A DNA stretch of 64,000 nt from the IMG/VR virus record IMGVR_UViG_3300030294_000005, positions 1 to 64,000 of that record, one strand, 5' to 3'. Both the position numbers and the translations under genes were made by a program. Of the stretch, positions 10,187 to 60,506 are shown one piece after another (positions within the stretch are counted from its first letter, which is position 1; each line of letters begins with the position of its first letter). The notes under the pieces are model-generated. The model did not search any database. It saw nothing but the letters and a program-made list of their open reading frames with translations, and had not been told where the DNA came from.

Positions 10187-10203
10187 TTAATGGGGGAATT
10201 CTA

Positions 10204-37529: not shown

Positions 37530-37772
37530 ATGAATTGGAATGAAGATAAATGGCAAAATGGAGAAGCGGAGCATCCTAATTATATAGTTAAATCAGATAA
37601 TGTAGCAGTTCCATTTTTTGATTTAGTATATGCTAATGCTTGGAAAAATAAACTTTGTAAATGTAATACTGAAGTTAGTATATTGGATTTAACTAAATAT
37701 GATTGGGTTGCCAATCCTGCACATATTAAATTTCATAAATTAAATAAGGAGAAAAACTATGGCAAGATATAG
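37530..37772 (+). CDS. Hypothetical protein
   Basis: GGAG RBS. Confidence 0.55.
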   Translation: MNWNEDKWQNGEAEHPNYIVKSDNVAVPFFDLVYANAWKNKLCKCNTEVSILDLTKYDWVANPAHIKFHKLNKEKNYGKI

Positions 37773-38031
37773 TGATAAGGATTTAAAAATACTAAAAAGA
37801 TTAAGATTCCAATTTAAAATTATTAATTTTATTTGGAAGTTAACCTATAGACTCAATTCTAGAATTGAGCATCTTAAAGATAAAAATAGAAACACTAAAT
37901 TAGCAATTGCTCGTAAATATCAAAATGAAGATTTGGCAAATGCTATAAAGTTATTAGCTGATGTATGTGATGGTGATAATAAGTATGGCAATAAAAGTAT
38001 AGTTTCTGAGATAAGTCATGACAAAATATAA
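37759..38031 (+). CDS. Paralogue family A, copy 1
   Basis: Shared N-terminus M..Y.(S)DKDL...KKLRF..KII.FI..L. Confidence 0.7.
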   Translation: MARYSDKDLKILKRLRFQFKIINFIWKLTYRLNSRIEHLKDKNRNTKLAIARKYQNEDLANAIKLLADVCDGDNKYGNKSIVSEISHDKI

Positions 38032-38422
38032 TAGTGATAAAGATTTAAAAGCAATCATTAGTAATGAGGAATTCAAAAAAGTAAAAAAATTAAGATTTAA
38101 ATTTAAAATTATTTATTTCATTTCTAAATTAATTAATGAAAAAAGTTCTAAAATTGAAAATCTTAAATATAAAACTTTTGATGCTATGTTATCAATTGCT
38201 GATAAACATAAAAAGAAAGAATTAAAAAATGAAGTTGATTCATTGACATCATATTTGTTAGATCAAGATAACAAAAATGGAATAAATTCAAAAATAGTAT
38301 ATTTGCCACAAGATAAAGAAAGCACTGATTATATAATGAGTAAATCTTTAGCTGAAAAATTATCAAATCCATTAGTAAAACCTTGTAAAATAGAAATAAA
38401 AGAAGAGGATAAATTGAAATAA
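38018..38422 (+). CDS. Paralogue family A, copy 2
   Basis: As above; C-terminal DYIMSKSLAEKLSNPLVK. Confidence 0.7.
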   Translation: MTKYNSDKDLKAIISNEEFKKVKKLRFKFKIIYFISKLINEKSSKIENLKYKTFDAMLSIADKHKKKELKNEVDSLTSYLLDQDNKNGINSKIVYLPQDKESTDYIMSKSLAEKLSNPLVKPCKIEIKEEDKLK

Positions 38423-38436
38423 TAAGGAGAAAAATT

Positions 38437-39114
38437 ATGGCAAAATATAGTAATAAAGATTTAAGAGCAATTACTAATAATAAGGAATTTAAAGAAATAA
38501 AAAAATTAAGATTTCAACTAAAAATTATTAATTTTATTTCTAGATTAACCAATGAGAACAATTTTAAAATTCAGGAACTTAAAAATAAAAATTTCAATTC
38601 TATACTATTATTTATTGATAAGTATAAAAAGAATGAATTACCAAGTAGAATAAATTTATTAACATCATATTTATTGAATGAGAAAAAAGTAATTAATAAA
38701 TATGATGAAAGAGGAAATCTAATTCATTATAAAGATTATAAGAATACTGAATATTGGAAACAATATGATGAAAAAGGAAACTTAATTCATTATAAAGATT
38801 CTAGGAATATTGAGTATTGGATGGATTATGATGAGAAAGAAAATATAATTCATTATAAAGATTGCGATGAAGAATGTTGGAGAGGGTATGATGATAAAAG
38901 AAATATAATTTATTATAAAAATTCCCGCAATTTTGAATATTGGAAACAATATGATGAAAAAGGAAATCTAATCAATTATAATTGTTATGATATGTATGGA
39001 TTAGAAGCTGATTATATAATGATGAGTAAATCTTTTGCTGAAAAAATATCAAAACCATTAGTAAAAAATTGTATACTAAAACCATCTTATATGCTATCAC
39101 ATTGGCACTATTAA
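38437..39114 (+). CDS. Paralogue family A, copy 3, with inserted YD-like 21-aa repeats
   Basis: YDE.GNLIHYKD...EYW repeats; C-terminal DYIMMSKSFAEKISKPLVK. Confidence 0.7.
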   Translation: MAKYSNKDLRAITNNKEFKEIKKLRFQLKIINFISRLTNENNFKIQELKNKNFNSILLFIDKYKKNELPSRINLLTSYLLNEKKVINKYDERGNLIHYKDYKNTEYWKQYDEKGNLIHYKDSRNIEYWMDYDEKENIIHYKDCDEECWRGYDDKRNIIYYKNSRNFEYWKQYDEKGNLINYNCYDMYGLEADYIMMSKSFAEKISKPLVKNCILKPSYMLSHWHY

Positions 39115-39770: not shown

Positions 39771-39795
39771 ATATAATAATTAGGAGTTGATTAAT

Positions 39796-41280
39796 ATGGG
39801 AATTTACAATCCTACAAATAATATAATTCATTTAAATGAACTAGCTATATTATTAGAAACGACTGGTGTAGAAAGAAAATGGAAATGTCCTTATTGTGAT
39901 TATCATGATACAAGAGAAAGATTAGTAAGTCATGTTGATGATGAACATGAAGATATGTTATCAGAAGATTATCCTGCATCAAGAGCTGTATTTAATTATA
40001 TAAATAAAAAGGATCATGGTTCTTGTATTGTATGTAAAAAAGAAACTAAATGGAATGATGAGACTTGGAGATATGAAAGATTATGCGAAATGCCAAAATG
40101 TGAGAAAGAATATATAGCTGGAATGAGAGCTAATATGGTTGGTGTATTTGGTAAAGAGAATTTATTAAATGATCCAGAACAACAAAAAAAGATGTTATCT
40201 AATAGAAAAATCTCAGGAACATATAAATTTGAAGATGGTGGTATTAGATCATACTGTGGTTCTTATGAAAAGAAATTATTAGAGTTTTATGATAAAGTTG
40301 TACGTGCTCATTCTAAAGATGTAATCACTCCTGGTCCTGTAATACAATATCAATATCAAGGAAAAACATTGAATTGGATTACTGATGTATACTATGTGCC
40401 AGCAAATCTGGTCCATGATGTAAAAGATGGTGGAGATAATCCTAACAATAGGCAAATGGATGACTATAGAGCTAAGCAAGATGCAAAAGAAGACGATATT
40501 TCTAAATTAAACAAATATAACTATATAAGATTAACTAATAATAATTTTGATCAATTACTATTGATACTTGCTGAAATAAAATATCAAATGATTGATCCGA
40601 ATAAAGAAAATAATACTGATTATATTATAAGAATAAATGAATCTGAATTAGGAGGGGCTATGCCAAATCAAAATAACCAATCAGACAATGCTTATATCAT
40701 ACCATATCTAATGGATAATTCTTTTAATATTGCTTTATCTACTGATAAGTATTTCTCTAATATGTATAAGATAAAAGATAATAAAATAGAAAAAGGATCT
40801 ATCAAAGATTTATATGAGAGTAAATATAATGTATACAAATATACTGGAGATAATTTTAAAGAAGTATATAAAAGTATATTAGAAGATTATAATAATAAAA
40901 CAAATATAGATAATAGATTCTATCTATATGAAAAAGTATGTGGGAAAAACTTATTAAGTATGGATCAATTAATATTTGATGAAAACTTAGAAGACTGTGC
41001 TGACGCATTTATTGAATCAGTATTAGATACTCAGATAAATGAAGCTACACTTATTCATCTTGCTAATAAAGAAACCCATAGTTTATTATACACAGAGTTA
41101 ACTGATATGCTAGATATAAATAGTAAGAAAAGGATATTATTCAATAATGAAAATACAAATATATTACAAGACATGAATGGATACTTTATATATAATGAAC
41201 AAAGTGATAGAAGAACAAAATCTTATGATAGTATATCATCAATACCTTATATAAATATTATGATTAATAGACTAGCTTAA
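39796..41280 (+). CDS. Virion protein with C2H2/C4 zinc fingers and a PD-(D/E)xK-like nuclease domain
   Basis: CPYC..H....H, CIVC...C and TDVYYVPANLVHDVKDG; starts MGIY at ATG 39796 (AGGAG RBS). Confidence 0.55.
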   Translation: MGIYNPTNNIIHLNELAILLETTGVERKWKCPYCDYHDTRERLVSHVDDEHEDMLSEDYPASRAVFNYINKKDHGSCIVCKKETKWNDETWRYERLCEMPKCEKEYIAGMRANMVGVFGKENLLNDPEQQKKMLSNRKISGTYKFEDGGIRSYCGSYEKKLLEFYDKVVRAHSKDVITPGPVIQYQYQGKTLNWITDVYYVPANLVHDVKDGGDNPNNRQMDDYRAKQDAKEDDISKLNKYNYIRLTNNNFDQLLLILAEIKYQMIDPNKENNTDYIIRINESELGGAMPNQNNQSDNAYIIPYLMDNSFNIALSTDKYFSNMYKIKDNKIEKGSIKDLYESKYNVYKYTGDNFKEVYKSILEDYNNKTNIDNRFYLYEKVCGKNLLSMDQLIFDENLEDCADAFIESVLDTQINEATLIHLANKETHSLLYTELTDMLDINSKKRILFNNENTNILQDMNGYFIYNEQSDRRTKSYDSISSIPYINIMINRLA

Positions 41281-41364
41281 TTGCTAGTCTTTTTTTTTTG
41301 TTGATATTATAATTTTTAATTATATATTATATATATGAATAAAATATAAGGAGATGTTTTTATT
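41269..41364 (+). repeat. Terminator-early promoter-RBS cassette
   Basis: AGACTAGC-ttaatt-GCTAGTCT, T-tract, AATTATATATTATA..ATGAATAAAATATAA..GGAGATGT. Confidence 0.75.
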
Positions 41365-41775
41365 ATGAAAGATTATAAAAATATACATAGTTTTAGTGAA
41401 GGACTAGCAGCTGTAGAATCAAAACATAAATGGGGATTTATTAATAAAGAAGGAGAAGAAGCTATACCATGTAAATATTGGCAAGTATATGATTTTTGTG
41501 AAGGATTAGCATCGGTAGAATTAGATAATAAGTATGGATGTATAGATAAGACTGGTAAAGAAGTTATACCGTTTAAATATGATTTTATATCTAGTTTTAA
41601 AGAAGGATTAGCATTGGTAGAATTGAATAATAAGATGGGATTTATTAATACAAAAGGAGAGGAGGTTGTACAATTAATATATAATAAAGTATATGATTTC
41701 AAAGAAGATTTAGCAGTTGTAATATCATTAGAGGGGGAATTTTGTGTTATAAATAGGAATGGTAAAAGATTATAA
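41365..41775 (+). CDS. WG-repeat protein 1
   Basis: F.EGLA.V....KWGFI...G.E.IP..Y repeats; no signal peptide. Confidence 0.9.
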   Translation: MKDYKNIHSFSEGLAAVESKHKWGFINKEGEEAIPCKYWQVYDFCEGLASVELDNKYGCIDKTGKEVIPFKYDFISSFKEGLALVELNNKMGFINTKGEEVVQLIYNKVYDFKEDLAVVISLEGEFCVINRNGKRL

Positions 41776-41780
41776 TTAAT

Positions 41781-41881
41781 AGACTAGCTTAGTTGCTAGT
41801 TTATTTTTTTTTGTTAAATTTAATAATAATTATATATTATATACATGAATAAAATATAATTTATAAGGAGATGTTTTTATT
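41781..41881 (+). repeat. Terminator-early promoter-RBS cassette
   Basis: Near-identical to the 41269 and 49995 cassettes. Confidence 0.75.
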
Positions 41882-42226
41882 ATGGAAAAAGAATTAAATT
41901 TAAAACAATTATTATTAACTAAAGATATTAAGAAAGGATTAAATTCTGATCTATTTAGTGATAAATCAGAATTAAAAGCTGCATTAAACAAAGTCATATC
42001 ATTTGATGGCGATAATCAAATACGTGTAGATGCGGTTGTTGATGGAAAAGATGTATCATTTGAAAATACCCTATATAAAAAAGAACTATATCTATTAGAG
42101 TCAAGAGTGTTTGATAAAAAAACTGATAGTTTTATTGGTGCATATTTAAAGGTTGTTGAATCTGATGGACATGTATTAGATTTAAATAATGTATGGGGAA
42201 CTACTGATTGGAATGTAGTAAAATAA
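41882..42226 (+). CDS. Hypothetical protein within the WG array
   Basis: Own cassette promoter and RBS. Confidence 0.65.
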   Translation: MEKELNLKQLLLTKDIKKGLNSDLFSDKSELKAALNKVISFDGDNQIRVDAVVDGKDVSFENTLYKKELYLLESRVFDKKTDSFIGAYLKVVESDGHVLDLNNVWGTTDWNVVK

Positions 42227-42250
42227 AATTTATAAGGAGATGTTTTAATT

Positions 42251-42901
42251 ATGAAAGAATACGATAAATCATTTGGATTTTTTGAAGGATTAGCATCAGT
42301 ATCATTAGATGGAAAATGGGGATTTATTAATAATAAAGGTGAAGAGATAATACCATTAATATATGATTATGGATTTAATTTCAATGAAGGACTAGCTAAA
42401 ATAACATTGAATGGCAAATACGGATATATTAATACTATAGGTAAAGAAATAATACCATGTAAATATGATATGTTAACTAGAATTTCTGAAGGATTAACTG
42501 CAGTAAGGGGGAATGATTATAAATGGGGATATATTAATATAAAAAATGAATTAGTAATACTATATAAATATGATTTTGCGGGAAATTTTAGAGAAGGGTT
42601 TGCCCGTATAAGAATAGGCCACGAATGGGGATATATTAATACTAAAGGTGAAGAGATAATACCATGTAGATATAGTATGGCAAGAAAATTTTCAAATGGT
42701 ATAGCTAAGGTTCGTATAGGTAAATTGTGGGGATTAATCAATAAAGAAGGAAAAGAATTAGCTCCTATTATATATAAAACTATATCTGATTTTAAAGATG
42801 GTATTGCTGAAATAGAAATAGATGATAAATTTGGATTTATGAATACTGAAGGAAAAGTAATAGCAATATATAAATATACTATATCAGATACTAGAGATTA
42901 G
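42251..42901 (+). CDS. WG-repeat protein 2
   Basis: WG repeats. Confidence 0.9.
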   Translation: MKEYDKSFGFFEGLASVSLDGKWGFINNKGEEIIPLIYDYGFNFNEGLAKITLNGKYGYINTIGKEIIPCKYDMLTRISEGLTAVRGNDYKWGYINIKNELVILYKYDFAGNFREGFARIRIGHEWGYINTKGEEIIPCRYSMARKFSNGIAKVRIGKLWGLINKEGKELAPIIYKTISDFKDGIAEIEIDDKFGFMNTEGKVIAIYKYTISDTRD

Positions 42902-43007
42902 ATTAATTAATAGACTGGCTTAACTGTTAGTCTATTTTTTTTGTTAAATTTAATAATAATTATAATATAAACAATTATATAAATAAAGATTATAGGAGGA
43001 ATATGAT

Positions 43008-43622
43008 ATGAGGGAATATGATAGTATACATGATTTTCAAGATGGATTAGCATCAGTAAAATTAGGTAATAAATGGGGTTTTATCAATACTAAAGGTGAA
43101 GAAATAATTCCATTTATATATGATTATGGATTTAATTTTAAAGATGGTCTAGGAATGGTAGAATTGAATGGTAAATGGGGATGTATAGATAAGAATGGTA
43201 AAGAAATAATATCATGTAAATATGATCAGATATTTACATTTTATAATGGCTTAGCATCTATAGAATTGAATAATAAATATGGGTATATAGATAAAACTGG
43301 TAAAGTAATAATTCCAATAATGTATGATTATGTATATGACTTTACCGAAGAATTAATACGAGTACAATTAAATAATAAAACAGGGTTTATTAATATAGAA
43401 AATAAAATAATAATACCATTAATATATGATCATACTTATAGTTTTATTAAAGATGGAATGATTTCAGTAGAATTGAATGGTAAATGTGGATATATAAATA
43501 TAAAAGGCGAAGAAGTAATACCTTGTATATATGATGAAATATATGATTTTCAAGAAGGTTTAGCAGGTGTTAAATTAAATAATAAATTCTATTTTATAGA
43601 TAAAAGTGGTAAAAAATTATAG
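43008..43622 (+). CDS. WG-repeat protein 3
   Basis: WG repeats. Confidence 0.9.
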   Translation: MREYDSIHDFQDGLASVKLGNKWGFINTKGEEIIPFIYDYGFNFKDGLGMVELNGKWGCIDKNGKEIISCKYDQIFTFYNGLASIELNNKYGYIDKTGKVIIPIMYDYVYDFTEELIRVQLNNKTGFINIENKIIIPLIYDHTYSFIKDGMISVELNGKCGYINIKGEEVIPCIYDEIYDFQEGLAGVKLNNKFYFIDKSGKKL

Positions 43623-43664
43623 TATTAACAACTATATAAAATAAAATTTATTGGGGGAATTAAT

Positions 43665-44039
43665 ATGAATGAAAAAATCAAAGCTCAAATCTGTTTTGCA
43701 GGAACTGCAAATCTAGAAAAGGTAAAAGAACAACTAGTACAATTAAAGAATGAAAATAAATATGAATTTCATTGTTGCTTTTTACCAAGGCATATAGTAG
43801 TTGAAAAAGGATTTACAACAGATATAATTGATATGCTTGAAAATACATTAGGTGATGATCTTATATGGGAACTAAAAGAATATAAATCATTTGATGATAT
43901 TATGAAAGATTTATATACTGTAAGAGAGCACGTTGCTAATACAGTAAATAGAATGTTTGTTTTAGATTCAGGTACTGCTAGAGGTGTTGCTAAAGAAATT
44001 GAGCTATTCACTTCTGCAAAAGTTATAATGATGCCTTAA
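43665..44039 (+). CDS. Small Rossmann-like protein (possible SLOG/nucleoside-deoxyribosyltransferase fold)
   Basis: ICFAGT N-terminal strand-loop; RMFVLDSGTARGVAKEIELF resembles the SLOG/NDT G-T..E motif. Confidence 0.4.
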   Translation: MNEKIKAQICFAGTANLEKVKEQLVQLKNENKYEFHCCFLPRHIVVEKGFTTDIIDMLENTLGDDLIWELKEYKSFDDIMKDLYTVREHVANTVNRMFVLDSGTARGVAKEIELFTSAKVIMMP

Positions 44040-44046
44040 GAAAGTT

Positions 44047-44142
44047 AAACTAGAGATTGATTTCTCTAGTTTATTTTTTGCCAAATTTAATAATAACCAT
44101 ATATTATACATATGAATAAATTTATAAGGAGATGTTTTAATT
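44047..44142 (+). repeat. Terminator-early promoter-RBS cassette
   Basis: AAACTAGAGA-ttgatt-TCTCTAGTTT; AACCATATATTATACATATGAATAA; TTTATAAGGAGATGTTTTAATT. Confidence 0.7.
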
Positions 44143-44292
44143 ATGAATATATATGATAATATACTTAGTGAAGGATTAATAAGATCAAGACGAGATAATA
44201 AATGGGGGTTTAGTAATAAAGAAGGAGAAGAAGTAATACCCTGTATGTGCCACGATCCTATATTATATTTAAATAAGGAGACATCTAAATGA
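44143..44292 (+). pseudogene. Truncated single WG repeat (49 aa)
   Basis: MNIYDNILSEGL...KWGFSNKEGEEVIPC, then loses the pattern; stop overlaps the next ATG. Confidence 0.6.
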
Positions 44293-44822
44293 AAGAATAT
44301 GATATTAAAAATGGATTAATAATAGTAATGCTAAATGATAAATGGGGATTAATGAATAAAGATAATGAAGAAATTATACCATGTATATATGATCATATAT
44401 TTAAATTCGAAGAAGGGATAGCTCCAGTTTCATTAAATGGTAAGATGGGGTTTATTAATACAAAAGGCGAAGAAATAATTCCATGTAAATATATATATAA
44501 TTCATATAATACTATTTTTCATGATGGGCTTTCCCCAGTAAGAGTAGATAATAAATTTGGATATATTAATAAAAAAGGTGAAGAAATAATACCATTAAAA
44601 TATGATATGGCTTGTTATTTTAGAGAAGGATTAGCATCTGTAAATCTAAATGATAAATGGGGATTTATTAATACAAAAGGTGAAGAAGTAGTACCATTGA
44701 TATATGAAAATGCATTATTTAGTTTTGATAAAAAAATATTATGTGTAAGAACAAAGAGTGGATGGGGTACTATTAATAAGGATGATATATTATTTGATAA
44801 AGAGGATGTTCTAAATGAATGA
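44289..44822 (+). CDS. WG-repeat protein 4
   Basis: WG repeats. Confidence 0.9.
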   Translation: MKEYDIKNGLIIVMLNDKWGLMNKDNEEIIPCIYDHIFKFEEGIAPVSLNGKMGFINTKGEEIIPCKYIYNSYNTIFHDGLSPVRVDNKFGYINKKGEEIIPLKYDMACYFREGLASVNLNDKWGFINTKGEEVVPLIYENALFSFDKKILCVRTKSGWGTINKDDILFDKEDVLNE

Positions 44823-45420
44823 ATTAGGATTTGTATCTACTTATCATGAAGGACTTTTTAGAACGATAAAGGATGGTAAATGGGGTTTTATTGATAAAAC
44901 TGGTAAAATAATAATACCATATAAATATGATTTTGCATATAATTTTATGAATGGAATTGCATTTGTAAAACTAAATGGTAAATGTGGATTTATTAATAAG
45001 AAAGATAAAGAAATTGTATTAATAAAATATGACGATATATCTGATTTTAATGAAAAAATATCTATAGTAAAGCTTAATGATAAGTGGGGATTAATAGATA
45101 ATCGTGGAAGAGAAATAATACCATTAAGATATGATTGGATATCTAGATTAGAAAGGGTATTTAAAATAGGAAAGGTATCTAAATTTGATGATTATATTGC
45201 AACAGTAAGGCTAGACAATAAATATGGATTAATAAATGTAAAAGGGGAGGAGATAACACCTATAAAATATGATGATGTATTTGAATTTGATAAGAATGGA
45301 TTTGCAATAGTAAAAGCAAATGATAAATTTGGAGCTATTAATAAAGAAGGCAAAGAAGTTATACCATGTGAATATGATAAAACATCTAATTTTAATGATA
45401 TGGTTAAAGGGGGATATTAA
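44815..45420 (+). CDS. WG-repeat protein 5
   Basis: WG repeats. Confidence 0.9.
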   Translation: MNELGFVSTYHEGLFRTIKDGKWGFIDKTGKIIIPYKYDFAYNFMNGIAFVKLNGKCGFINKKDKEIVLIKYDDISDFNEKISIVKLNDKWGLIDNRGREIIPLRYDWISRLERVFKIGKVSKFDDYIATVRLDNKYGLINVKGEEITPIKYDDVFEFDKNGFAIVKANDKFGAINKEGKEVIPCEYDKTSNFNDMVKGGY

Positions 45421-46248
45421 ATGAAAAAATATGACTATGTATTTAGTTTTAATGATGGATTAGCAAAAGTAGTATTGAATGATAAATGGGGATTTATTAA
45501 TAAAAAAGAAGAAGAAGTAATACCATTAATATATGATATCGTATCTAAATTTAATAAAAGATTAATAGCTGTAAACATTAATAATAAATGTGGAATTATT
45601 AACAGAAAAGGTAAAATAATAATTCCATTAATATATGATAATATGTCTCAATATATTAATAATGATCATATGATAAAAGTAACACTTAATGGTGGTTGGG
45701 GATTTATCAACACTAATAATAAAGTTGTAGTCCCATTAAAATATGATGATATAAGTGAATTTAGTAAAGGGCTTTGCTCATTTAGACTGGATGAAAAATG
45801 GGGTATTATAAATAGAAGGGGTAAAGAAACAGTTTCATGTAAATATGATGATATAGATGAGTTTGAAAATGGATTAGCAGCTGTAAAACTAAATAATAAA
45901 TGGGGTGTTATTAATAAACGAGATAAAGAAATAATACCAATAAAATATGATGATATATTTAGTTTTGATAAAAAAAGACTTCTAGTAGTATTGAATAATA
46001 AATATGGATTAATTAATAGAAATGATGAAGAAATAGTTTCATGTAAATATGATTATATAGATGATTTTATTGATGGATTATCAATGGTGAAATTAAATGA
46101 TAAATTTGGATTCATTGATAGAAATGGTAAAGAAGTTATACCATTAATATATAATGAAGCACATAATTTTCATAATAAGCATACTATAGTAAAATTAAAT
46201 GATAAGTGGATATATATAAATAAAGCTGGTAAAGAAATACAATTATAA
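45421..46248 (+). CDS. WG-repeat protein 6
   Basis: WG repeats. Confidence 0.9.
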   Translation: MKKYDYVFSFNDGLAKVVLNDKWGFINKKEEEVIPLIYDIVSKFNKRLIAVNINNKCGIINRKGKIIIPLIYDNMSQYINNDHMIKVTLNGGWGFINTNNKVVVPLKYDDISEFSKGLCSFRLDEKWGIINRRGKETVSCKYDDIDEFENGLAAVKLNNKWGVINKRDKEIIPIKYDDIFSFDKKRLLVVLNNKYGLINRNDEEIVSCKYDYIDDFIDGLSMVKLNDKFGFIDRNGKEVIPLIYNEAHNFHNKHTIVKLNDKWIYINKAGKEIQL

Positions 46249-46261
46249 GGGGATGTATTAA

Positions 46262-46771
46262 ATGAAAAAATATGATGATCTAGGTAGTTTTAGTGAAGGT
46301 TTAGCTGAGATTAGATTAGGTAGTAAATGGGGGTTTATTAATAGAGAATTAGTAGAGGTTATACCATGTAAATATAGTTCTGCAGAACTTTTTAGTGAAG
46401 GTTTAGCAGTGGTATCATTAGATGGTAAATTTGGATATATAGATAAGGCTGGTAAAGAAGTTATACAGTGTAAGTATGATTATGCATATGATTTTATTGA
46501 AGGAATGGCATTAGTAAGATTAGATGATAATATAGGATATATTAATAAAGAAGGTAAAGAAGTTATATCGTTAATATATGCTAATGGTTATGAATTTTGT
46601 GGTGGCTTAGCAATAGTAGAATCAGGTTGTAGAATGGGATTTGTTGATAAAAAAGGTGAAGAAGTAATTCCATTAATATTTGATGAAGTATATGATTTCA
46701 AAGAAGATTTAGCAGTTGTAAAATTAAATGGTAAATGTTATTTCATAAATAAAGTTGGTGAAGAAATATAA
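46262..46771 (+). CDS. WG-repeat protein 7
   Basis: 169 aa; tandem duplicate of the next gene (534-bp period). Confidence 0.9.
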   Translation: MKKYDDLGSFSEGLAEIRLGSKWGFINRELVEVIPCKYSSAELFSEGLAVVSLDGKFGYIDKAGKEVIQCKYDYAYDFIEGMALVRLDDNIGYINKEGKEVISLIYANGYEFCGGLAIVESGCRMGFVDKKGEEVIPLIFDEVYDFKEDLAVVKLNGKCYFINKVGEEI

Positions 46772-46795
46772 TATAAAAAAGGTGGTATATATTAA

Positions 46796-47305
46796 ATGAA
46801 AAAATATGATGATCTTAATAGATTTTATGAAGGATTAGCAGAAATTAGATTGGGTGATAAATATGGATTTATTAATAAAGAATTGATAGAAGTTGTTCCA
46901 TGTAAATATGATTTCATATCTAGTTTTAGTGAGGGATTAGCAATAGTTGGATTAGATAAGAAATATGGCTTTATTAATAAAGATGGTGAAGAAGTTATAC
47001 CATTAAAATATGATTATGTGTGTGATTTTAATGAAGAACTTGCTTTAGTAAAATTGAATGATAAGATGGGATATATTAATAAAGAAGGTAAAGAAGTTAT
47101 ACCATTGATATATGATGATGTATATGATTTTCATAAAGGATTAGCCATAGTAGTATTGGATAATAAATGGGGATTTATTGATAAAGAAGGTAAAGTAATC
47201 ATATCCTTAATATATGATGAAGCATATGATTTTCATAAAGGTTTAGCAGTTGTAAGATTAAATAGTAAATGTTATTTTATAAACAAAGCTGGTAAAGAAA
47301 TATAA
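46796..47305 (+). CDS. WG-repeat protein 8
   Basis: 169 aa; same start MKKYDDL, same end EI* and same downstream spacer as protein 7. Confidence 0.9.
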   Translation: MKKYDDLNRFYEGLAEIRLGDKYGFINKELIEVVPCKYDFISSFSEGLAIVGLDKKYGFINKDGEEVIPLKYDYVCDFNEELALVKLNDKMGYINKEGKEVIPLIYDDVYDFHKGLAIVVLDNKWGFIDKEGKVIISLIYDEAYDFHKGLAVVRLNSKCYFINKAGKEI

Positions 47306-47328
47306 TATAAAAAAGGTGGTATGTATTA

Positions 47329-47781
47329 ATGTATAAAGTAATAGGTAAATTTCAAGAATTAGATGGAATAGAAAAAGAAAGTCTTAGTGAAATTAAAAAA
47401 GAACTAGGTCTTATTGGTTCATTATCTGCAGATGTAGGAAATATTGAATTATATTATACAGATGATGGTAACACATATGCTATAACTAAAGACAGTGAGT
47501 ATTATTATGGTAATAAGGGTGATACAGAAGATATTATTATTGCAAGGAATAAGCAAGGAAGACCTAGAGATACTATGACATTAGGAGATGTATCTAATAT
47601 ATTAAAAGAGCAAAATCCTAATGTATTATTAAATGATGTAAAATTATATGATAAATTTCTTAATCCCATTATGAGTATTGCTATTAATAATAAAAAGAAA
47701 CTTATTAGTTTATTAACAGATAGTGATTTTGTTGGAATTAATAAGCCAGCAAAAGTTTTAAGTGATATCAACTTTAAATAA
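47329..47781 (+). CDS. Hypothetical protein
   Basis: AAGGTGG RBS. Confidence 0.6.
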   Translation: MYKVIGKFQELDGIEKESLSEIKKELGLIGSLSADVGNIELYYTDDGNTYAITKDSEYYYGNKGDTEDIIIARNKQGRPRDTMTLGDVSNILKEQNPNVLLNDVKLYDKFLNPIMSIAINNKKKLISLLTDSDFVGINKPAKVLSDINFK

Positions 47782-47810
47782 TATATTTTAATTATAAAGG
47801 AGTAAAGTTT

Positions 47811-47990
47811 ATGGACGAAGATAGTATAAAAGTAGGAGATATCATTATAGGGACTGGTGATACTATGGAGATGGTATGTTCAGTAAAAGATAATATGATA
47901 TATACATTTGATGATAATACGTACAATACAAATGATGTCATAAAAGTAAAACCTAATTTAAATAAAACTAGACCAACTCCTAATATATAA
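47811..47990 (+). CDS. 59-aa hypothetical protein, paralogue of 49821-50003 (missed by the ORF track)
   Basis: MDEDSIKVGDIIIGTGD... versus MDRNDIKIADIIIGVGD...; AAGGAG RBS. Confidence 0.7.
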   Translation: MDEDSIKVGDIIIGTGDTMEMVCSVKDNMIYTFDDNTYNTNDVIKVKPNLNKTRPTPNI

Positions 47991-48045
47991 ATATAATAAA
48001 CCAGCTTAATTGCTGGTTTATTTTTTTGTCAATTGTATATTTTTT

Positions 48046-49820: not shown

Positions 49821-50003
49821 GTGGATAGAAATGATATAAAAATAGCAGATATTATTATAGGGGTAGGCGATGTTAAAGAAGTAGTATATCTAATAAAAAA
49901 TAATATCGTATATACTTGTGAAGGTAATAAATATAATATAGGCGATGTTATAAAAGTAAGATCTAATATAATCAAAAGTAAATTCGTTCCTATAATAGAC
50001 TAG
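49821..50003 (+). CDS. 60-aa hypothetical protein
   Basis: Paralogue of 47811. Confidence 0.65.
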   Translation: MDRNDIKIADIIIGVGDVKEVVYLIKNNIVYTCEGNKYNIGDVIKVRSNIIKSKFVPIID

Positions 50004-53509: not shown

Positions 53510-56500
53510 ATGATTTATATGGGAGTTTATGATGCAACTAAATTTCATGAAATAAAAACGAATGAAAGAGAAATAGAAAAGTATAAAGTTCAATATCCTA
53601 AATTATCACATGTAAGATGTGATAAAGAAAATGAAGGAATAATACTAGATAATAATGGAGCATTTGTAGCAATTATTCAATGGGATAACAAGTCTAAATA
53701 TATAGTAGCTTTAGAAGTTGCTCCAGAGTATCGTAAAAATGGAATTGGTAAATACTTATTAAAAAAAGCCTATTCTAAAGGTATAAATAAATTATCAGTA
53801 AATAAGAGTAATACATCTGCTATAAAGTTATATATTAAGAGTGGATATAAAGAAGAAAAAACCGATAAGACTATGATATATATGATTAAAGAATCCACTA
53901 TAAATGAAAACTATTTTTTTAGTGGCGATGATATAGTATTAAATATAGAAAAATGGAAAGCAGATTCACCGAATAATATACTATATGTAACTGGATTAAG
54001 TGGTAGTGGAAAGACTACACTAGCAGCAGAATATGAAAAAAAGTATAATGCTGAAATGTTTGAAATAGATGGTTTGGAATATAGTTATGACGCATCTAAA
54101 AGTAAATTATTACAAAAAGCAAAAGATAAATATCCAGAATATGCTGAAGCATTAAAAAATGACTGGAAAGATTTAAAAGGAAATCCAGGAGTAGATTTAT
54201 TAATAAGAGTTTTATTATATGTAATTAAAGAAATGAAGGATTCTGGAAAATTATATATATTAGATGGGGTACAAATATTTCAATGGTTAGATCCTGATAC
54301 TTTAAAAAGTCAACCATTAATTATTAAAGGAACATCTATGACTAAAAGTATATATCAAAGATTTAAAAGAAATGGTGGAGATAAAATAGATTGGATTGCT
54401 GAACTACGTAATAAATTTCCACAATTGTTTAAAAGATATCTAAAAGATGAAAAGGAAGTTAGTACATTTAAAAAATCAATAAAAGAATCATATAATATAG
54501 GAGATCAATTTAGTTGGGAAACTTTTGGTGGAAACAAATATTCTGGAATAATCTCAGAAATAGATAGCAATGTTTTAATTGTTAAATTAAAAGATGGAAC
54601 ACAGAAAGCTGTTGAGATGAGAGAATCTTCTACTGCTGATACAGATGATATTAATGATTGGGAAAAGAATACTAATTCAGAATTGATTGGTGATGATTCA
54701 AACAATCTATCAGAGTTAGAGAAGGAAAAGAATAATTATGATATGCTTATTTATAAACAAAAAAGAGTAGCAGATTGGAAGAGTGAAGAATTATTTGGTA
54801 AAGATAATACTGAAAGATATGATGAATTAAAAGATAAATATTTAAAAACTATTGATAATTTTGATGATGTATATAATACTCCACAAATAAATACCGAAGC
54901 ATCTATATCATCAGCAGATGGATTTGAAATAGACGATTCTAAAGATAATGAATATACTAAATTAAGCGATGATCCAAATAATGAAGTTCCAGGATATGAT
55001 TCAGCTACTTTAAAACAAGCTATAATGTGGTGCAATAATACAATGGTAAGTATGATATTACCAGTTGGATCTTTAAAAGAATTAGAAGATTCTTATGTTA
55101 AATGGAGATCAATGACTAGAAAGCATCAAAGAGATAGTGATAATAAAAGTATAGAATTATTTGGAATGAATAATTTAGAACATTTTGATTATTTAAAATC
55201 AAAATTTATTGGTACTCAAAGTAGTGGAGATAAATCATATGATACTACATCAGTACTAGATGTGTCTGGTAAAGCAATAGAAATAGATCAGATACGAGAT
55301 GATTTAACTGCAAATGGCAATACGAATGGAAATGCAAATGGAGACATGCATGAATCATCTATGTTGGATTATGGTATATCATTATTAAGAATAAATAATA
55401 TTATAACAGAAGATATCTGTTCTAATATAGTAAAAGAAAATGCTATAAAAGATATAAAAAATAAACTTAATAACGCATATGATAAATCATATGATTCACT
55501 TCCAACACAATTACCATACTTTTCATTTAATGAAATACAATCTAGAATAGACACCTCTAACCCATACAAATATGCTGGTCTTAGTAAAGATATAAGTTTA
55601 AAAACATGGTTAGAGAGTTATTCCTTGATATGTAGTGGGATACTCGATTCTAGAATGAAAGAGTATACTCCATTATGGATAACTAAACTAGATAGTCTAT
55701 ATAGAGATTTATATAAAGCAACGGATGATACAAAGATACATCAATTAAAAGAAAATATATTATTATTAGGATGGAATCCAGAAGTTAATTTTACTTATGA
55801 AAATAGAATTAAGGCTACTGATAGATGCATGTCTATCATATCAGAGTATTATAAAGATAATTCTATAAATTTATCTCCATTAATTAATAATATAAATTTA
55901 AATAATAATGTAATAACTGAGCAAAATAAAAAAGATGAATTATATCCAATATATATATTATTATCATATACTAGTACTATTGCAGGAAAGGTAATATCAA
56001 GAGTTACAGATAGTATATATTCTCATGCTTGTTTAAGTCTTGATTCATCACTTCAAAAACTATATAGTTTTAATGCAAACGTGCATGGGTTCTCACTAGA
56101 ATCTATAACTGAGTATCTGAAGTATAATAAGAATAGTATAATACAACTCAGTTGTGTATTTGTTAAAGCTCCAGACTTATCTATTATAGAATCTGGATTA
56201 AATGATTTATTATTGAATATAAGAAATACATCATATAGCTTTTTAAATATACTTGGAATAATGTTAGACAAATCTATACAGCTAAATAATTCTATGATAT
56301 GTTCTCAATTTGTAGATTATATGTTTAAATCAATAAATGTAGATATAACTAATAAACCAAGTGGATTAGTAATGCCTAAAGATTTTCAAGTGTTAAAGAA
56401 TAATAAAGTATATAAATTATATGAAGGAAAGATAGCTGACTATAATAGTCAGAAGATTAATTCAATGATGAATGTACTAATAAAGAAAGCTATATATATA

Positions 56501-57097
56501 AAAGAGAGTTTAAATATAATAAATGAGTCACAATTTATAGACACACTATCAAAGAACTCCAATGACATTAATATTATAGCATACTTGAATCAATCACATG
56601 ATATACTGGAAGCTAGTAATCAATTAATATATAATGATTATATAGATCCATATATAAATATATCTTGCATGACTGAATCAAAAGAATTTCCAGTTCAATT
56701 TGATAAAGATGGTAATCTTCTAATTAGAAATAAGAAAAATATAGATTTTGAAGTTGAATACTCTAAAGCACATAAGCTATTAAAGATATATGATAGCACT
56801 GATAATACAGAAGGTATGAAATATGAACTATCTAAACTATGGTTTCTAAATTTATTACTAGAAGATATGATCTATACTCAAAAGAATAAAGATCCAGAAT
56901 ATTTAAAAGTAAGAGCAAGATCTTTAAATGATTTTAATAAGTATATTATTGTAGTGTCTAAACAAGATAAAGATTTTAATTTTACTGAGTACTATAATAA
57001 TACTCCATTTAGTGATGAGACAACAAAGATAAATAGTAGCACATTAAAATATACTGGAGAAATACTAGAAAAGATATTAAAACATTTAATCCATTAA
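53510..57097 (+). CDS. Multi-domain virion polyprotein: GNAT, P-loop kinase, small beta-barrel, permuted NlpC/P60 and conserved domains (likely start 53519)
   Basis: EYRKNGIG/NTSAIKLY; YVTGLSGSGKTT; YSHACLSLD...MICSQFV; domains separated by xxE|S-type sites. Confidence 0.75.
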   Translation: MIYMGVYDATKFHEIKTNEREIEKYKVQYPKLSHVRCDKENEGIILDNNGAFVAIIQWDNKSKYIVALEVAPEYRKNGIGKYLLKKAYSKGINKLSVNKSNTSAIKLYIKSGYKEEKTDKTMIYMIKESTINENYFFSGDDIVLNIEKWKADSPNNILYVTGLSGSGKTTLAAEYEKKYNAEMFEIDGLEYSYDASKSKLLQKAKDKYPEYAEALKNDWKDLKGNPGVDLLIRVLLYVIKEMKDSGKLYILDGVQIFQWLDPDTLKSQPLIIKGTSMTKSIYQRFKRNGGDKIDWIAELRNKFPQLFKRYLKDEKEVSTFKKSIKESYNIGDQFSWETFGGNKYSGIISEIDSNVLIVKLKDGTQKAVEMRESSTADTDDINDWEKNTNSELIGDDSNNLSELEKEKNNYDMLIYKQKRVADWKSEELFGKDNTERYDELKDKYLKTIDNFDDVYNTPQINTEASISSADGFEIDDSKDNEYTKLSDDPNNEVPGYDSATLKQAIMWCNNTMVSMILPVGSLKELEDSYVKWRSMTRKHQRDSDNKSIELFGMNNLEHFDYLKSKFIGTQSSGDKSYDTTSVLDVSGKAIEIDQIRDDLTANGNTNGNANGDMHESSMLDYGISLLRINNIITEDICSNIVKENAIKDIKNKLNNAYDKSYDSLPTQLPYFSFNEIQSRIDTSNPYKYAGLSKDISLKTWLESYSLICSGILDSRMKEYTPLWITKLDSLYRDLYKATDDTKIHQLKENILLLGWNPEVNFTYENRIKATDRCMSIISEYYKDNSINLSPLINNINLNNNVITEQNKKDELYPIYILLSYTSTIAGKVISRVTDSIYSHACLSLDSSLQKLYSFNANVHGFSLESITEYLKYNKNSIIQLSCVFVKAPDLSIIESGLNDLLLNIRNTSYSFLNILGIMLDKSIQLNNSMICSQFVDYMFKSINVDITNKPSGLVMPKDFQVLKNNKVYKLYEGKIADYNSQKINSMMNVLIKKAIYIKESLNIINESQFIDTLSKNSNDINIIAYLNQSHDILEASNQLIYNDYIDPYINISCMTESKEFPVQFDKDGNLLIRNKKNIDFEVEYSKAHKLLKIYDSTDNTEGMKYELSKLWFLNLLLEDMIYTQKNKDPEYLKVRARSLNDFNKYIIVVSKQDKDFNFTEYYNNTPFSDETTKINSSTLKYTGEILEKILKHLIH

Positions 57098-57809: not shown

Positions 57810-58217
57810 ATGACTGAATTTATTTATAAAAATGGAGAAGATAATGCAACAAATTTTTTCATATCAAAACAATTAGAAAAATATAAAGTTAAAACTATAT
57901 TAGAATTATACAAAACTCTATCTAAAGAAATTATTAATACATCTTCTTTTATTAAGTCTGATGATGAAAAAAGATTTATTCTTTTAAGTACATTTAAATT
58001 AGTATTTAATGAATATAATAGATTAGAATCGTATAAGTGTATTAATTATTCAAATATTATTTCAAAAGAAGAATTTAAAAATACAATGATTAAAATTAAT
58101 AATATTGATAGTATTAAGATTAGATGTAAAGAAGCAGATAATTTGATGATAAAAACATTATCTAGTCTAGGGTATGATGAAGGAATAAATATATATAAAA
58201 ATAGAGAGGGTATTTAA
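57810..58217 (+). CDS. Hypothetical protein
   Basis: AAGGAG RBS. Confidence 0.6.
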   Translation: MTEFIYKNGEDNATNFFISKQLEKYKVKTILELYKTLSKEIINTSSFIKSDDEKRFILLSTFKLVFNEYNRLESYKCINYSNIISKEEFKNTMIKINNIDSIKIRCKEADNLMIKTLSSLGYDEGINIYKNREGI

Positions 58218-58218
58218 A

Positions 58219-58710
58219 ATGAAAATAATATTAGTTAAAGAAGAAAATGGTCTTTTATATGAAGTTGCAAAGATTGTCTATAAGAATAAACCTACAGGAT
58301 TTATCTTTAAACCTTCAACTCAGTTAGATATAATTGGTAAAATGATAACTGATGAAACTGATAAAGATAAGCAAGATATTATAATAAGAGATTTTAGTTA
58401 TATTAAAAATTTATTTAGTCCATTATTAGAAAAAAATAATGAGATTATTAAAAAGGATGAAAATGAAACTAGAATAAAAATAATTAATAGATATCTAGCA
58501 ATGATGGCTTGTAGATATGGTTTAACAATTATTGATTTGAATAAAGATGGAAGATATTATGAGTTACATAAAAGATACATATATAGAAGAGTTAAACCAT
58601 TTACTAGGCCAGCTATGATGCATGAAAATCTATCATATCCTATATCTGCATTAAATGAATGTATTAAAAAAAATAATGAAGCTTTTTTTGGCACTAAAAA
58701 AGTTAAATAA
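58219..58710 (+). CDS. Paralogue family B, copy 1
   Basis: Shared ~120 aa MKIILVKE..GFLYEV..IVYK.KP.GF.FK domain. Confidence 0.75.
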   Translation: MKIILVKEENGLLYEVAKIVYKNKPTGFIFKPSTQLDIIGKMITDETDKDKQDIIIRDFSYIKNLFSPLLEKNNEIIKKDENETRIKIINRYLAMMACRYGLTIIDLNKDGRYYELHKRYIYRRVKPFTRPAMMHENLSYPISALNECIKKNNEAFFGTKKVK

Positions 58711-58724
58711 GGGAGATATGTAAA

Positions 58725-59120
58725 ATGAAAATAATATTAGTTAAAGAAAAAGAAGACGGCTTTTTCTATGAAGTTGTAAAAGTTATTTATAGAAAAAAGG
58801 CTATAGGATTCACTTTTAAAGTTTCAACTAAATTAAATATATTTGGTAGAATGATAGCAGATGAGACTGATAAAGATAAGCAAAATGAAATAATAAATGA
58901 TTTTAATAATATTAAAGATATCTTTTATTCCCATATTGGAGAAGATATAGATATTGGTGAAGAAAATAAAAGTATGAAGGAAATTATTAATACATACTTA
59001 ACAAAAATAACTACTAAGTATGGTTTAATACTTATTGATTTTAAAAAAGATAAAGATTTTTATCAATGTTATAAAAAAGGTATATATAAAAGAGTTGAAC
59101 CAATTACTCAAAAAATCTAA
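58725..59120 (+). CDS. Paralogue family B, copy 2
   Basis: Core domain only. Confidence 0.75.
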   Translation: MKIILVKEKEDGFFYEVVKVIYRKKAIGFTFKVSTKLNIFGRMIADETDKDKQNEIINDFNNIKDIFYSHIGEDIDIGEENKSMKEIINTYLTKITTKYGLILIDFKKDKDFYQCYKKGIYKRVEPITQKI

Positions 59121-59146
59121 ATAAAGATCTAAGGGAGCATATAAAA

Positions 59147-59755
59147 ATGAAAATAATATTAGTTAAAGAAACAGAAAATGGATTCTTACATGAAGTAGTA
59201 AAGGTTGTTTATAAAGACTATCCTTCTAAATTTACTTTTAGAGGCGTGGTTCAATTACAGATAGTTGGAAAGATGATAGCTAATGAAACTGATAAAAATA
59301 AACAAAATATAATAATATCAGATTTTAGTAATATTCAAGATATACTAGGATTTTATTTAGGAAGGGATTATGATTATGATAATATCAATTCTAATAAAAA
59401 TATTAATAGAGAAGATTTGATAAGAACATATTTAGCAATGATAGCTAGTAAATATGGATTATCATTAATTGATTTGAAAAAAGATAAAGATCTTTATGAA
59501 TTATATAAAGAAGGAATTTATATAAAGAAGCAATTTAATAATGATAATAAAGGTATTAGAGATAATTTAATACCAAAATTAATATTTAGTTATAGAGTTG
59601 GTGGTATTCCAATAATGAATATTGAATATGATAAAGAAACATCGCAACGCCCTATACCTGTTTCAGCATTTGCTAATGCAAAAGAATTAGTTTATACTAT
59701 AAATCCAATTACTGGACAAAAAGCTTATTTTGCTATTAAAAATAAATCTAAATAA
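59147..59755 (+). CDS. Paralogue family B, copy 3
   Basis: Core domain plus unique C-terminus. Confidence 0.75.
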   Translation: MKIILVKETENGFLHEVVKVVYKDYPSKFTFRGVVQLQIVGKMIANETDKNKQNIIISDFSNIQDILGFYLGRDYDYDNINSNKNINREDLIRTYLAMIASKYGLSLIDLKKDKDLYELYKEGIYIKKQFNNDNKGIRDNLIPKLIFSYRVGGIPIMNIEYDKETSQRPIPVSAFANAKELVYTINPITGQKAYFAIKNKSK

Positions 59756-59775
59756 AAATTAAGGAGATATGTAAA

Positions 59776-60492
59776 ATGAAAATAATATTAGTTAAAGAAA
59801 AAGAAGATGGTTTTTTATATGAAGTTGCAAGGATTGTCTATAAAAATAAGCCTGTAGGATTTACTTTTAAACCTTCAACTCAATTAGATGTGATTGGTAA
59901 AATGATAACTGATGAAATTGATAAAGATAAACAAAATGATATAATAGGTGACTTTAGTTGTATTAAAGATCTATTTTATTCATATTTAGGAGATGATTAT
60001 GAGATTAATAGTGAGTTTGCAAATGAGAATAGAATGCAAACAATTAGGATGTATCTATCAGTAATAGCTAATAAATATAATTTAATAATTATTGATTTGA
60101 AAAAAGATAAAGATTTTTATGAATTATATAAAAAAGGTATATATAGAAAAATTAAAACTAAACCAGTCGATTTACCCAAAGATAAGGAAGTTAAAACAAA
60201 TGCAATAAATTTAATAGATAAACTAATCACTCGCAGTCCTAAAATGGGAGGAGACCCTAGTTATACGTCAGTTAGTCTTAAGCATATACAACCACCTTTA
60301 CCAGAATATTTGATGTATAAAAAACAAGATAAAATAATAGATGATTTTATAGAAAAGGTAATAACTAGTATATATTCTTATGCAGGAATACCACCATCAT
60401 TACTTGATAATCCTATAAAACAAGATATAGTAAGTATATCAAAAAATGATATAGTTTTAGCAATGACTAAAGCTTATAAAAATGAAAATTAA
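59776..60492 (+). CDS. Paralogue family B, copy 4
   Basis: Core domain plus C-terminus shared with copy 5 (IYSYAGIP). Confidence 0.75.
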   Translation: MKIILVKEKEDGFLYEVARIVYKNKPVGFTFKPSTQLDVIGKMITDEIDKDKQNDIIGDFSCIKDLFYSYLGDDYEINSEFANENRMQTIRMYLSVIANKYNLIIIDLKKDKDFYELYKKGIYRKIKTKPVDLPKDKEVKTNAINLIDKLITRSPKMGGDPSYTSVSLKHIQPPLPEYLMYKKQDKIIDDFIEKVITSIYSYAGIPPSLLDNPIKQDIVSISKNDIVLAMTKAYKNEN

Positions 60493-60506
60493 GGGAGATA
60501 TGTAAA

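What the first reader, a model, noticed from the sequence alone, without database searches (positions are those of the whole stretch)
41365..47305. Array of eight signal-less WG-repeat-only proteins plus a fragment: a diversifying binder library?
Seen: ~6 kb encoding 8 proteins (136-275 aa) made almost entirely of ~34-35 aa F.EGLA.V....KWG(F/Y)I...G.E.IP..Y units. They differ in repeat number and surface residues, have no signal peptide or other domain, and mostly have early promoters. There are signs of ongoing turnover: a 534-bp tandem duplication (46262/46796) and a one-repeat relic (44143). Known: WG/KWG repeats usually occur in secreted or lipoprotein bacterial proteins and their function is unclear. 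Inference: cytoplasmic, possibly hetero-oligomeric beta-propeller/solenoid binders that titrate host defence or signalling proteins.
Basis: partly seen in the sequence, partly recalled or inferred. Interest (0 to 1): 0.7.

Follow-up and report, generated by a model that had tools for sequence, protein, structure and literature searches.

The report
Early WG-repeat gene array in jumbo phage
A 236-kb phage from peat carries a cluster of eight small genes (plus a stub and one distant copy) made only of a bacterial 'WG' beta-repeat; they are switched on by the phage's earliest promoters and absent from all its known relatives, so they are probably host-targeting accessory proteins, but there is no sign that they are diversifying now.

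Summary
Window 41365-47305 encodes eight intact proteins (136-275 aa) made only of 34-aa PF14903 WG repeats, with no signal peptide. There is also a 49-aa one-repeat ORF, and a tenth copy at 106 kb in the genome. The host record is a 236-kb, 25%-GC jumbo phage from peat that has its own multisubunit RNA polymerase.

New points:
- Seven of the eight genes, plus the stub and the distant copy, sit behind a promoter matching the published AR9 virion-polymerase early consensus. The strict form occurs 30 times genome-wide against 1.6 expected.
- All 33 related phage records lack WG repeats. The array lies in a 12-kb island that is about 1 kb in the closest relative.
- Confident models show open arcs of compact four-stranded blades, not closed propellers.

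- The youngest duplication (G/H) is 21% diverged.
- Repeats show no recent turnover, and the genome has no reverse transcriptase.
- Three assemblies and four further runs are identical.
- The variable positions are those of the whole family.
- Bacteria hold similar tandem arrays, including signal-less ones.

Best reading: an old, horizontally acquired, early-expressed family of cytoplasmic binding scaffolds. Their targets are unknown.

The parts
41322..41337 (+). Early promoter motif ATATATTAT-N6-G driving gene A
   Evidence: Matches the AR9 virion-RNAP early consensus (PMC5312081). It is one of 45 genomic sites against about 12 expected.
41365..41775 (+). WG gene A, 136 aa, 4 repeats
   Evidence: PF14903 at 139 bits; repeats mapped.
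41778..41805 (+). Intrinsic terminator after A
   Evidence: 11-bp stem followed by a T-run. Eight terminators found in the region against 0.6 expected.
41832..41847 (+). Early promoter motif driving orf114 and B
41882..42226 (+). orf114, non-WG, no family match
   Evidence: It is the only gene of this interval conserved in relative G016 (40% identity). No Pfam or PHROG hit.
42251..42901 (+). WG gene B, 216 aa, 6 repeats
   Evidence: PF14903 at 205 bits.
42909..42936 (+). Intrinsic terminator after B
42942..42983 (+). Degenerate copy of the promoter cassette upstream of C
   Evidence: 80% identical to the cassette family (D8), but it fails the strict early motif.
43008..43622 (+). WG gene C, 204 aa, 6 repeats
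   Evidence: PF14903 at 235 bits.
43665..44039 (+). orf124, non-WG, no family match
44046..44073 (+). Intrinsic terminator
44099..44114 (+). Early promoter motif driving the relic-D-E-F-G-H operon
44143..44292 (+). 49-aa ORF with one WG repeat (the 'relic'); it leads the operon and overlaps the start of D by ATGA
   Evidence: Closest to the first repeat of A: 58-63% identity over 36-42 aa depending on the alignment.
44289..44822 (+). WG gene D, 177 aa, 5 repeats
44815..45420 (+). WG gene E, 201 aa, 5 repeats plus a degenerate linker
45421..46248 (+). WG gene F, 275 aa, 8 repeats
   Evidence: PF14903 at 262 bits. AF2 model pLDDT 92.
46262..46771 (+). WG gene G, 169 aa, 5 repeats
   Evidence: Old duplicate of H.
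46796..47305 (+). WG gene H, 169 aa, 5 repeats
   Evidence: AF2 model pLDDT 97, pTM 0.87.
47329..47990 (+). Two non-WG ORFs (150 aa and 59 aa) closing the same transcription unit
   Evidence: No terminator or promoter lies between H and 47995.
47995..48022 (+). Intrinsic terminator ending the operon

Best explanation
The array is a lineage-specific expansion of bona fide WG-repeat (PF14903) proteins inside an accessory island of a peat jumbo phage of the AR9/phiR1-37 type.

**Shown**
- Ten family members, all made of 34-aa repeats only and lacking export signals.
- They are organised in four terminator-bounded transcription units.
- Three of those units, and the distant copy, start at a promoter with the sequence and spacing of the AR9 virion-RNA-polymerase early promoter.
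- All known relatives of the phage lack the family.
- The scaffold positions are under purifying selection.
- Predicted structures are very confident open arcs of compact four-stranded blades, with the curvature of 8-10-bladed propellers.

**Inferred**
- An ancestral WG gene was captured from a bacterium, where such genes commonly form tandem arrays. It was then multiplied by whole-gene duplication, with the terminator-promoter-RBS cassette carried along. This happened long ago.
- The proteins are made in the host cytoplasm within minutes of DNA injection. They act as soluble binding scaffolds whose exposed, family-variable strand positions contact host macromolecules, contributing to takeover or to neutralising host conflict systems.

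I put about 0.85 on the descriptive part and about 0.35 on the host-protein-binder function.
For: - **Family and architecture:**
- **No signal peptide:**
- **Phage identity:** 236-kb virus record, 95% complete. RNAP beta subunit, major head protein and GroEL present. Distant capsid similarity to phiR1-37, LPJP1 and Staphylococcus jumbo phages.
- **Early promoter:**
  - ATATATTAT-N5-TGA occurs 30 times against 1.6 expected;
  - 40 of 45 sites of the looser form are intergenic, nearly all correctly oriented upstream of an ORF;
  - the published AR9 consensus is AAATATATATTAT-(6N)-G+1 (PMC5312081).
- **Terminators:** 8 found against 0.6 expected.
- **No AACA-type late-like motif in the array**.
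- **Accessory status:** 0 of 33 related records have WG repeats, 13 of them at least 90% complete. The interval is 12.2 kb here and about 1 kb in G016.
- **Largest paralogue family in the genome**.
- **Selection (G vs H):** scaffold omega 0.27 (0.15-0.49); variable sites 1.37 (0.61-3.9).
- **Structure:** pLDDT 92 and 97. Best full-length matches are arcs of 8-10-bladed propellers, rmsd 4.2-5.2 A for H.
- **Bacterial arrays as the likely source type:**
- **Link to conflict systems:** WG_beta_rep is enriched next to type XI retron loci alongside conflict-system domains (PMC13712802).
Against: - No expression data: no RNA run was listed.
- No binding partner is known, and the host is unidentified.
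- The family has no characterised function in any organism.
- There is no match to defence-system models (PADLOC) or to any PHROG family.
- Positive selection is not demonstrated.
- Gene C lacks a consensus promoter and follows a terminator, so it may be poorly expressed.
- The closest homologues are at most 56-58% identical and scattered over many phyla, so neither donor nor host can be named.
Confidence: 0.6

Rival explanations
2. Ligand sponge or lectin-like role: each blade binds the same small molecule or glycan, for example a signalling nucleotide or an envelope precursor. The multi-blade arcs would act as high-capacity sequestering proteins early in infection.
For: - Polar residues are unusually conserved in every repeat (K17, N/D22, E27, Y33, D34), along with an aromatic at position 18, as in lectin-type propellers.
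- Many bacterial homologues are extracytoplasmic.
- Early expression fits known phage sponges, but that comparison comes from my own knowledge and was not tested here.
Against: - No ligand is known for any WG repeat.
- Conserved polar residues can be purely structural, as in WD40; this is established knowledge, not a test made here.
Confidence: 0.15
3. Phage-internal role: virion, assembly or replication-compartment component rather than a host-directed factor.
For: Beta-propeller-like scaffolds often organise complexes. BamB is among the best fold matches.
Against: - Early-type promoters and no late-like motif.
- Absent from all 33 relatives, which share the structural module.
- Located in an accessory island.
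Confidence: 0.1
4. Functionless passenger: captured bacterial DNA that duplicated neutrally and is decaying.
For: - A truncated one-repeat ORF.
- A degenerate promoter before C.
- Irregular linkers in D, E and F.
- Overall omega of 0.44-0.55 is high for a phage gene.
Against: - All eight genes and all 48 repeats are in frame.
- Scaffold omega is 0.27 with an upper bound of 0.49.
- Consensus promoters, ribosome-binding sites and terminators are kept.
- GC content equals the rest of the genome.
- The tight, overlapping operon D-H is preserved.
Confidence: 0.07

Closest known systems
Bacterial WG repeat-containing proteins (Pfam PF14903), including their tandem arrays
   Same: - Same repeat at high score and the same per-position conservation profile.
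- Bacteria also hold tandem arrays: seven adjacent genes in [Eubacterium] yurii, eight in a Spirochaetota MAG, and several clusters in a Clostridia MAG.
- The Clostridia arrays are also signal-less and WG-only.
   Different: - The phage copies are shorter (103-275 aa against 207-632 aa).
- They lack the conserved 20-aa N-terminal leader of the Clostridia set, and the signal peptides or anchors of the others.
- They are transcribed from phage virion-polymerase promoters.
- They lie in a virus. Only 6 of 50,697 deposited phage records match protein F. In the three I examined, the repeats sit in single large frames rather than an array. PHROGs has no such family.
BamB / PQQ-like and other 8-10-bladed beta-propellers
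   Different: - No sequence membership in those families.
- Global TM is only 0.35-0.58.
- The best matches are arcs of larger rings rather than closed propellers of the same blade number.
- Blade number varies from 3 to 8 within one family.
AR9 early genes and virion-RNAP early promoters
   Same: Promoter sequence and spacing (ATATATTAT-N6-G), strong over-representation, intergenic placement, and downstream clusters of small unknown ORFs each followed by a terminator.
   Different: - The phage is only distantly related to the nearest cultured jumbo phages of this kind (22% capsid identity to phiR1-37 and LPJP1).
- Transcription start sites are not mapped here.
- AR9 is not reported to carry WG proteins: a paper search returned no phage study of this repeat, and no Bacillus phage record matched protein F.
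Lineage-specific expansions of repeat or small-domain proteins in jumbo phages and giant viruses
   Same: One family multiplied in one lineage inside a large viral genome. Examples are the roughly 35 zinc-ribbon copies in Bacillus phage G (PMC7824862) and the BTB/WD40 paralogues of mimiviruses seen among the viral fold matches.
   Different: A different fold and family, a much smaller family, a tandem layout, and a defined early promoter class.

Membership tests
Pfam PF14903 WG_beta_rep | Repeated ~35-aa unit scoring above the curated gathering threshold | tested here: met
   139-262 bits per protein against a 25.6 cut-off. 45 repeat matches in the genome.
Pfam PF14903 WG_beta_rep | Conserved aromatic-Gly core and the F..GLA.V / IP..YD flanks | tested here: met
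   F5 93%, G19 90%, I21 92%, Y33 97%, D34 94%. Position 18 is W, Y or F in 36 of 48 repeats. The profile correlates 0.84 with homologues.
Pfam PF14903 WG_beta_rep | All-beta repeat structure | tested here: met
   AF2 models at pLDDT 92 and 97 contain strands only, four per repeat.
Secreted or lipoprotein WG proteins (the common bacterial form) | N-terminal signal peptide or lipobox | tested here: not met
   Maximum hydrophobicity is 0.4-1.9 in the phage copies, against 2.4 or more in 50 of 120 homologues. This feature is not defining for PF14903 itself.
Closed beta-propeller | Four-stranded antiparallel blades | tested here: met
   DSSP of both models. Local matches to propeller blades at rmsd 2.3-3.8 A.
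Closed beta-propeller | Ring closure with a fixed blade number | tested here: inconclusive
   - The best full-length matches are arcs of 8-10-bladed rings.
- TM to closed 5-, 6- or 8-bladed designs is 0.5 or less.
- Blade number varies from 3 to 8.
- The N-terminal 'MK.YD' plus a truncated last repeat could be a velcro signature or simply a blade-boundary offset.
AR9-type virion-RNAP early promoter | Consensus AAATATATATTAT-(6N)-G | tested here: met
   Sites at 41322, 41832, 44099 and genome 106741(-) match ATATATTAT-N6-G. Consensus taken from PMC5312081.
AR9-type virion-RNAP early promoter | Over-representation, intergenic placement and orientation towards genes | tested here: met
   45 observed against about 12 expected. 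The strict form is 30 against 1.6. 40 of 45 sites are intergenic.
AR9-type virion-RNAP early promoter | Transcription start 6 nt downstream and early appearance without protein synthesis | not testable with these tools
   No RNA run was listed. The phage is uncultured.
Diversity-generating retroelement target | Reverse transcriptase plus a template/variable repeat pair | tested here: not met
   No RVT_1 match in the genome. No near-identical repeat pair in the array.
Known anti-defence proteins | Sequence or profile similarity to a characterised inhibitor | not testable with these tools
   No dedicated anti-defence library is offered. PHROGs and PADLOC gave nothing meaningful.

The most novel reading that the evidence does not exclude
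The phage WG arcs are a new class of early host-takeover or anti-defence proteins. They would act by mimicking, or co-assembling head-to-tail with, host WG-repeat modules. Examples of such modules are the WG accessory proteins found next to type XI retrons and the cytoplasmic WG arrays of low-GC Clostridia. This would poison or decoy a host conflict or signalling system, with the different blade numbers (3, 4, 5, 6, 8) allowing combinatorial ring completion.
Probability: 0.12. Interest if true: 0.8.

Novelty: new variant of a known kind. Interest (0 to 1): 0.5.

Why it matters
PF14903 is a widespread bacterial repeat with no known function, and it often occurs in large lineage-specific arrays.

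A phage that has captured a minimal, signal-less version and placed it under its very first promoters offers a simple handle on what these repeats bind. Whatever the phage copies target in the first minutes of infection is probably relevant to the cellular family as well.

It also adds a clear case of an accessory paralogue expansion in an uncultured AR9-like jumbo phage. In addition, it shows that the AR9 early-promoter grammar holds in a lineage only about 22% identical in capsid sequence to the nearest cultured jumbo phages of that kind (phiR1-37, LPJP1).

Tried and rejected
- **Homodimer prediction of H (two copies):** 'no answer', score 0.00. It is evidence neither for nor against binding.
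- **Alignment-based locus search in IMG/VR:** failed, because no stretch was conserved enough.
- **Degenerate KWGFINK DNA pattern in IMG/VR:** gave 13 foreign contigs, none with a real WG repeat.
- **Single-protein searches in IMG/VR and JGI metagenomes:** returned only the same phage at 100%, then 54% or less. No sister lineage is available for copy-number or surface comparison.
- **Two loose promoter regexes:** matched no more often than chance and were dropped.
- **dN/dS methods:**
  - ML dN/dS gave a saturated dS (2.4), and YN00 failed numerically.
  - Omega of 2.05 at variable sites chosen from the phage copies themselves is circular, so I replaced it with classes defined on the homologues only.
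- **AACA-type late motif:** not over-represented genome-wide, only concentrated in intergenic DNA, so its absence from the array is weak evidence.
- **Donor or host search with H:** scattered phyla, no signal.
- **tRNA scan of the window:** none found.
- **PDB sequence search:** nothing.
- **PADLOC, NCBIfam and PHROGs:** nothing meaningful.
- **RNA runs:** none was listed.
- **Joints in the read lay-out:** they have short sides (20-38 nt) at 85% likeness, and I take them as cross-mapping between repeats.
- **Rejected alternatives:**
  - bacterial contamination, because the array is flanked by phage genes, carries phage promoters and is identical in three assemblies;
  - a closed propeller with a fixed blade number.


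Full report
**What is there**

The window is the first 64 kb of a 236,184-bp virus record estimated 95% complete. GC content is about 25%. Public runs holding the sequence are peat metagenomes.

The genome encodes a multisubunit RNA polymerase beta subunit, a major head protein and a GroEL. Its capsid is only about 22% identical to those of phiR1-37, LPJP1 and the Staphylococcus jumbo phages. It is therefore an uncultured, distant member of the AR9/phiR1-37-like jumbo phages.

Between 41365 and 47305 lie eight intact ORFs, A to H, of 136-275 aa. Each matches Pfam PF14903 WG_beta_rep far above threshold and nothing else. A profile built from the repeats finds 48 units of 34 aa:
- A4, B6, C6, D5, E5, F8, G5, H5;
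- one in a 49-aa ORF at 44143-44292;
- three in a tenth member at genome 106385-106696 on the minus strand.

The proteins are repeats from end to end. Most open with 'MK.YD', the tail of a repeat. A, C, F, G and H end in a shared truncated repeat. None has a hydrophobic N-terminus.

Two other assemblies are 100% identical over 21.5 and 20.5 kb. Contigs from four more runs show no differences over the pieces that lie on the array. The array is therefore real.

**Transcription**

The 5' half of the array is built from a repeated terminator-promoter-RBS cassette. Intrinsic terminators stand at 41778, 42909, 44046 and 47995, part of eight found in the region against 0.6 expected.

Upstream of A, of orf114 (and hence B), and of the 49-aa ORF (and hence D-H) lies ATATATTAT-N6-G followed by AATAAA.
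- The published early promoter of AR9, read by the injected virion polymerase, is AAATATATATTAT-(6N)-G+1 (PMC5312081).
- Genome-wide, the motif occurs 45 times against about 12 expected.
- The stricter ATATATTAT-N5-TGA occurs 30 times against 1.6 expected.
- 40 of the 45 sites are intergenic, and nearly all point at an ORF.
- The distant copy X has one too.

Gene C has only a degenerate version and follows a terminator, so its expression is doubtful. An AACA-type motif occurs upstream of the capsid and other structural genes but not in the array. That motif is not statistically robust. No RNA run was listed, so early expression is inferred and not shown.

**Origin and age**

None of 33 related phage records has a single WG repeat. 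These have 48-65% capsid identity, or share the neighbouring endonuclease, and 13 are at least 90% complete.

In the closest complete relative, the endonuclease, the orf114 homologue and the large GNAT-AAA protein are adjacent within about 1 kb. Here the same interval is 12.2 kb. WG is the largest paralogue family in the genome.

Every phage copy has another phage copy as its best hit. Outside hits are at most 56-58% identical and spread over many phyla. This fits a single capture followed by in-phage expansion, but no donor can be named.

The expansion is old:
- G and H, the closest pair, are 64% identical in protein and 79% in DNA.
- The nearest repeat lies in another protein for 46 of 48 units. 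Terminal repeats correspond colinearly between proteins, and identity within proteins equals identity between them.
- No long DNA repeat exceeds 77% identity.
- The genome has no reverse transcriptase.

**Selection**

For G against H, omega is 0.44-0.55 by counting methods. I then defined site classes from bacterial homologues alone:
- scaffold positions give 0.27 (0.15-0.49);
- the nine family-variable positions give 1.37 (0.61-3.9).

Both copies are therefore maintained, and their exposed positions change at about the neutral rate or faster. The variability profile of the phage repeats correlates 0.84 with that of 286 repeats from homologues. The pattern belongs to the family and is not special to the phage.

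**Structure**

AlphaFold2 models of F and H are very confident (pLDDT 92 and 97, pTM 0.72 and 0.87). They are all-beta, with four short strands per repeat.

The prediction is thus an open, propeller-like arc, and blade number varies from 3 to 8. The variable positions alternate (1/3, 11/13, 18/20) along three neighbouring strands, which suggests one variable face per blade. That is an inference, because I could not read the coordinates. A homodimer job gave no answer.

**Comparison with what is known**

The repeat has no characterised function. It is reported as an accessory module beside type XI retrons (PMC13712802) and as a lipoprotein in P. aeruginosa (PMC8855297).

Tandem arrays are common in bacteria:
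- [Eubacterium] yurii and a Spirochaetota MAG have arrays of signal-bearing proteins.
- A 27%-GC Clostridia chromosome has arrays of signal-less WG-only proteins with a conserved 20-aa leader.

In phages the family is rare. Six of 50,697 deposited records match protein F. In the three of those I examined, the repeats lie in single large frames and not in an array. PHROGs has no such family.

**Verdict**

It is a new variant of a known kind. The family and the tandem-array habit are known from bacteria. The phage location, the minimal form and the early-promoter control are new.

Noticed in passing
window 58219-61226: A second tandem paralogue family: five adjacent genes of 131-239 aa, with no NCBIfam or PHROG match for the members tested. 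An early-promoter motif lies at 57771, two genes upstream (the first downstream ORF, 57810-58217, is not a family member).
   Followed up: partly
window 37759-39114: A three-member paralogue family ending in a 225-aa protein with YD/RHS-like repeats (TIGR01643 at 28 bits; weak PF05593). This is another repeat protein just upstream of the array.
   Followed up: partly
window 47811-47990 and 49821-50003: Two paralogous 59-60-aa ORFs of unknown function. One closes the WG operon and the other lies 2 kb downstream.
   Followed up: no
whole genome (G000), e.g. window 2004, 6376, 9573, 18287, 36979, 48050, 50047, 57771: AR9-type early promoter motif at 45 sites, often followed by AATAAA and, about 10 nt on, by a conserved GTTAGTAG element. 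This gives a ready-made map of the early regulon of an uncultured jumbo phage. The kinship with AR9 and phiR1-37 raises the untested possibility of uracil-containing DNA.
   Followed up: partly
window 53510-57097: A 1195-aa protein combining an N-terminal GNAT acetyltransferase, an AAA-type ATPase and an enoyl-CoA hydratase-like region. It is conserved in relative G016 at 36% identity.
   Followed up: no
L148, L149, L150 (Clostridia MAG CANRQA01, contigs C1, C2, C46): Chromosomal tandem arrays of signal-less WG-only proteins that all open with a conserved ~20-aa leader (consensus close to MTRNGFVNENVEKMCKKKYD). This could be a targeting or processing signal. The phage copies lack it.
   Followed up: partly
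L036-L038, gene at 10001-10594: In a Bacteroidota-like contig, a signal-bearing WG protein sits in a cluster with an FHA protein, a PP2C phosphatase and a Ser/Thr kinase. This hints at a signalling context for some cellular WG proteins.
   Followed up: no
window 39787-41280: A 497-aa protein with an N-terminal zinc-finger-like motif and a phage endonuclease domain (phrog_15137) lies directly upstream of the array. It is conserved next to orf114 in G016, so it is not part of the insertion, but it marks the island's left border.
   Followed up: partly
window 15286, 11555, 4752, 49213: TAACA(A/T)TAT-type motif upstream of the capsid gene and other genes. It resembles the AR9 late promoter core AACA. 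It is concentrated in intergenic DNA but not over-represented genome-wide.
   Followed up: partly
window 42000-48000: GC skew on the coding strand rises to 0.45-0.54 across the array, against 0.2-0.3 elsewhere. This probably reflects the G-rich codons of the Gly/Glu/Lys-rich repeat. GC content itself matches the genome.
   Followed up: no
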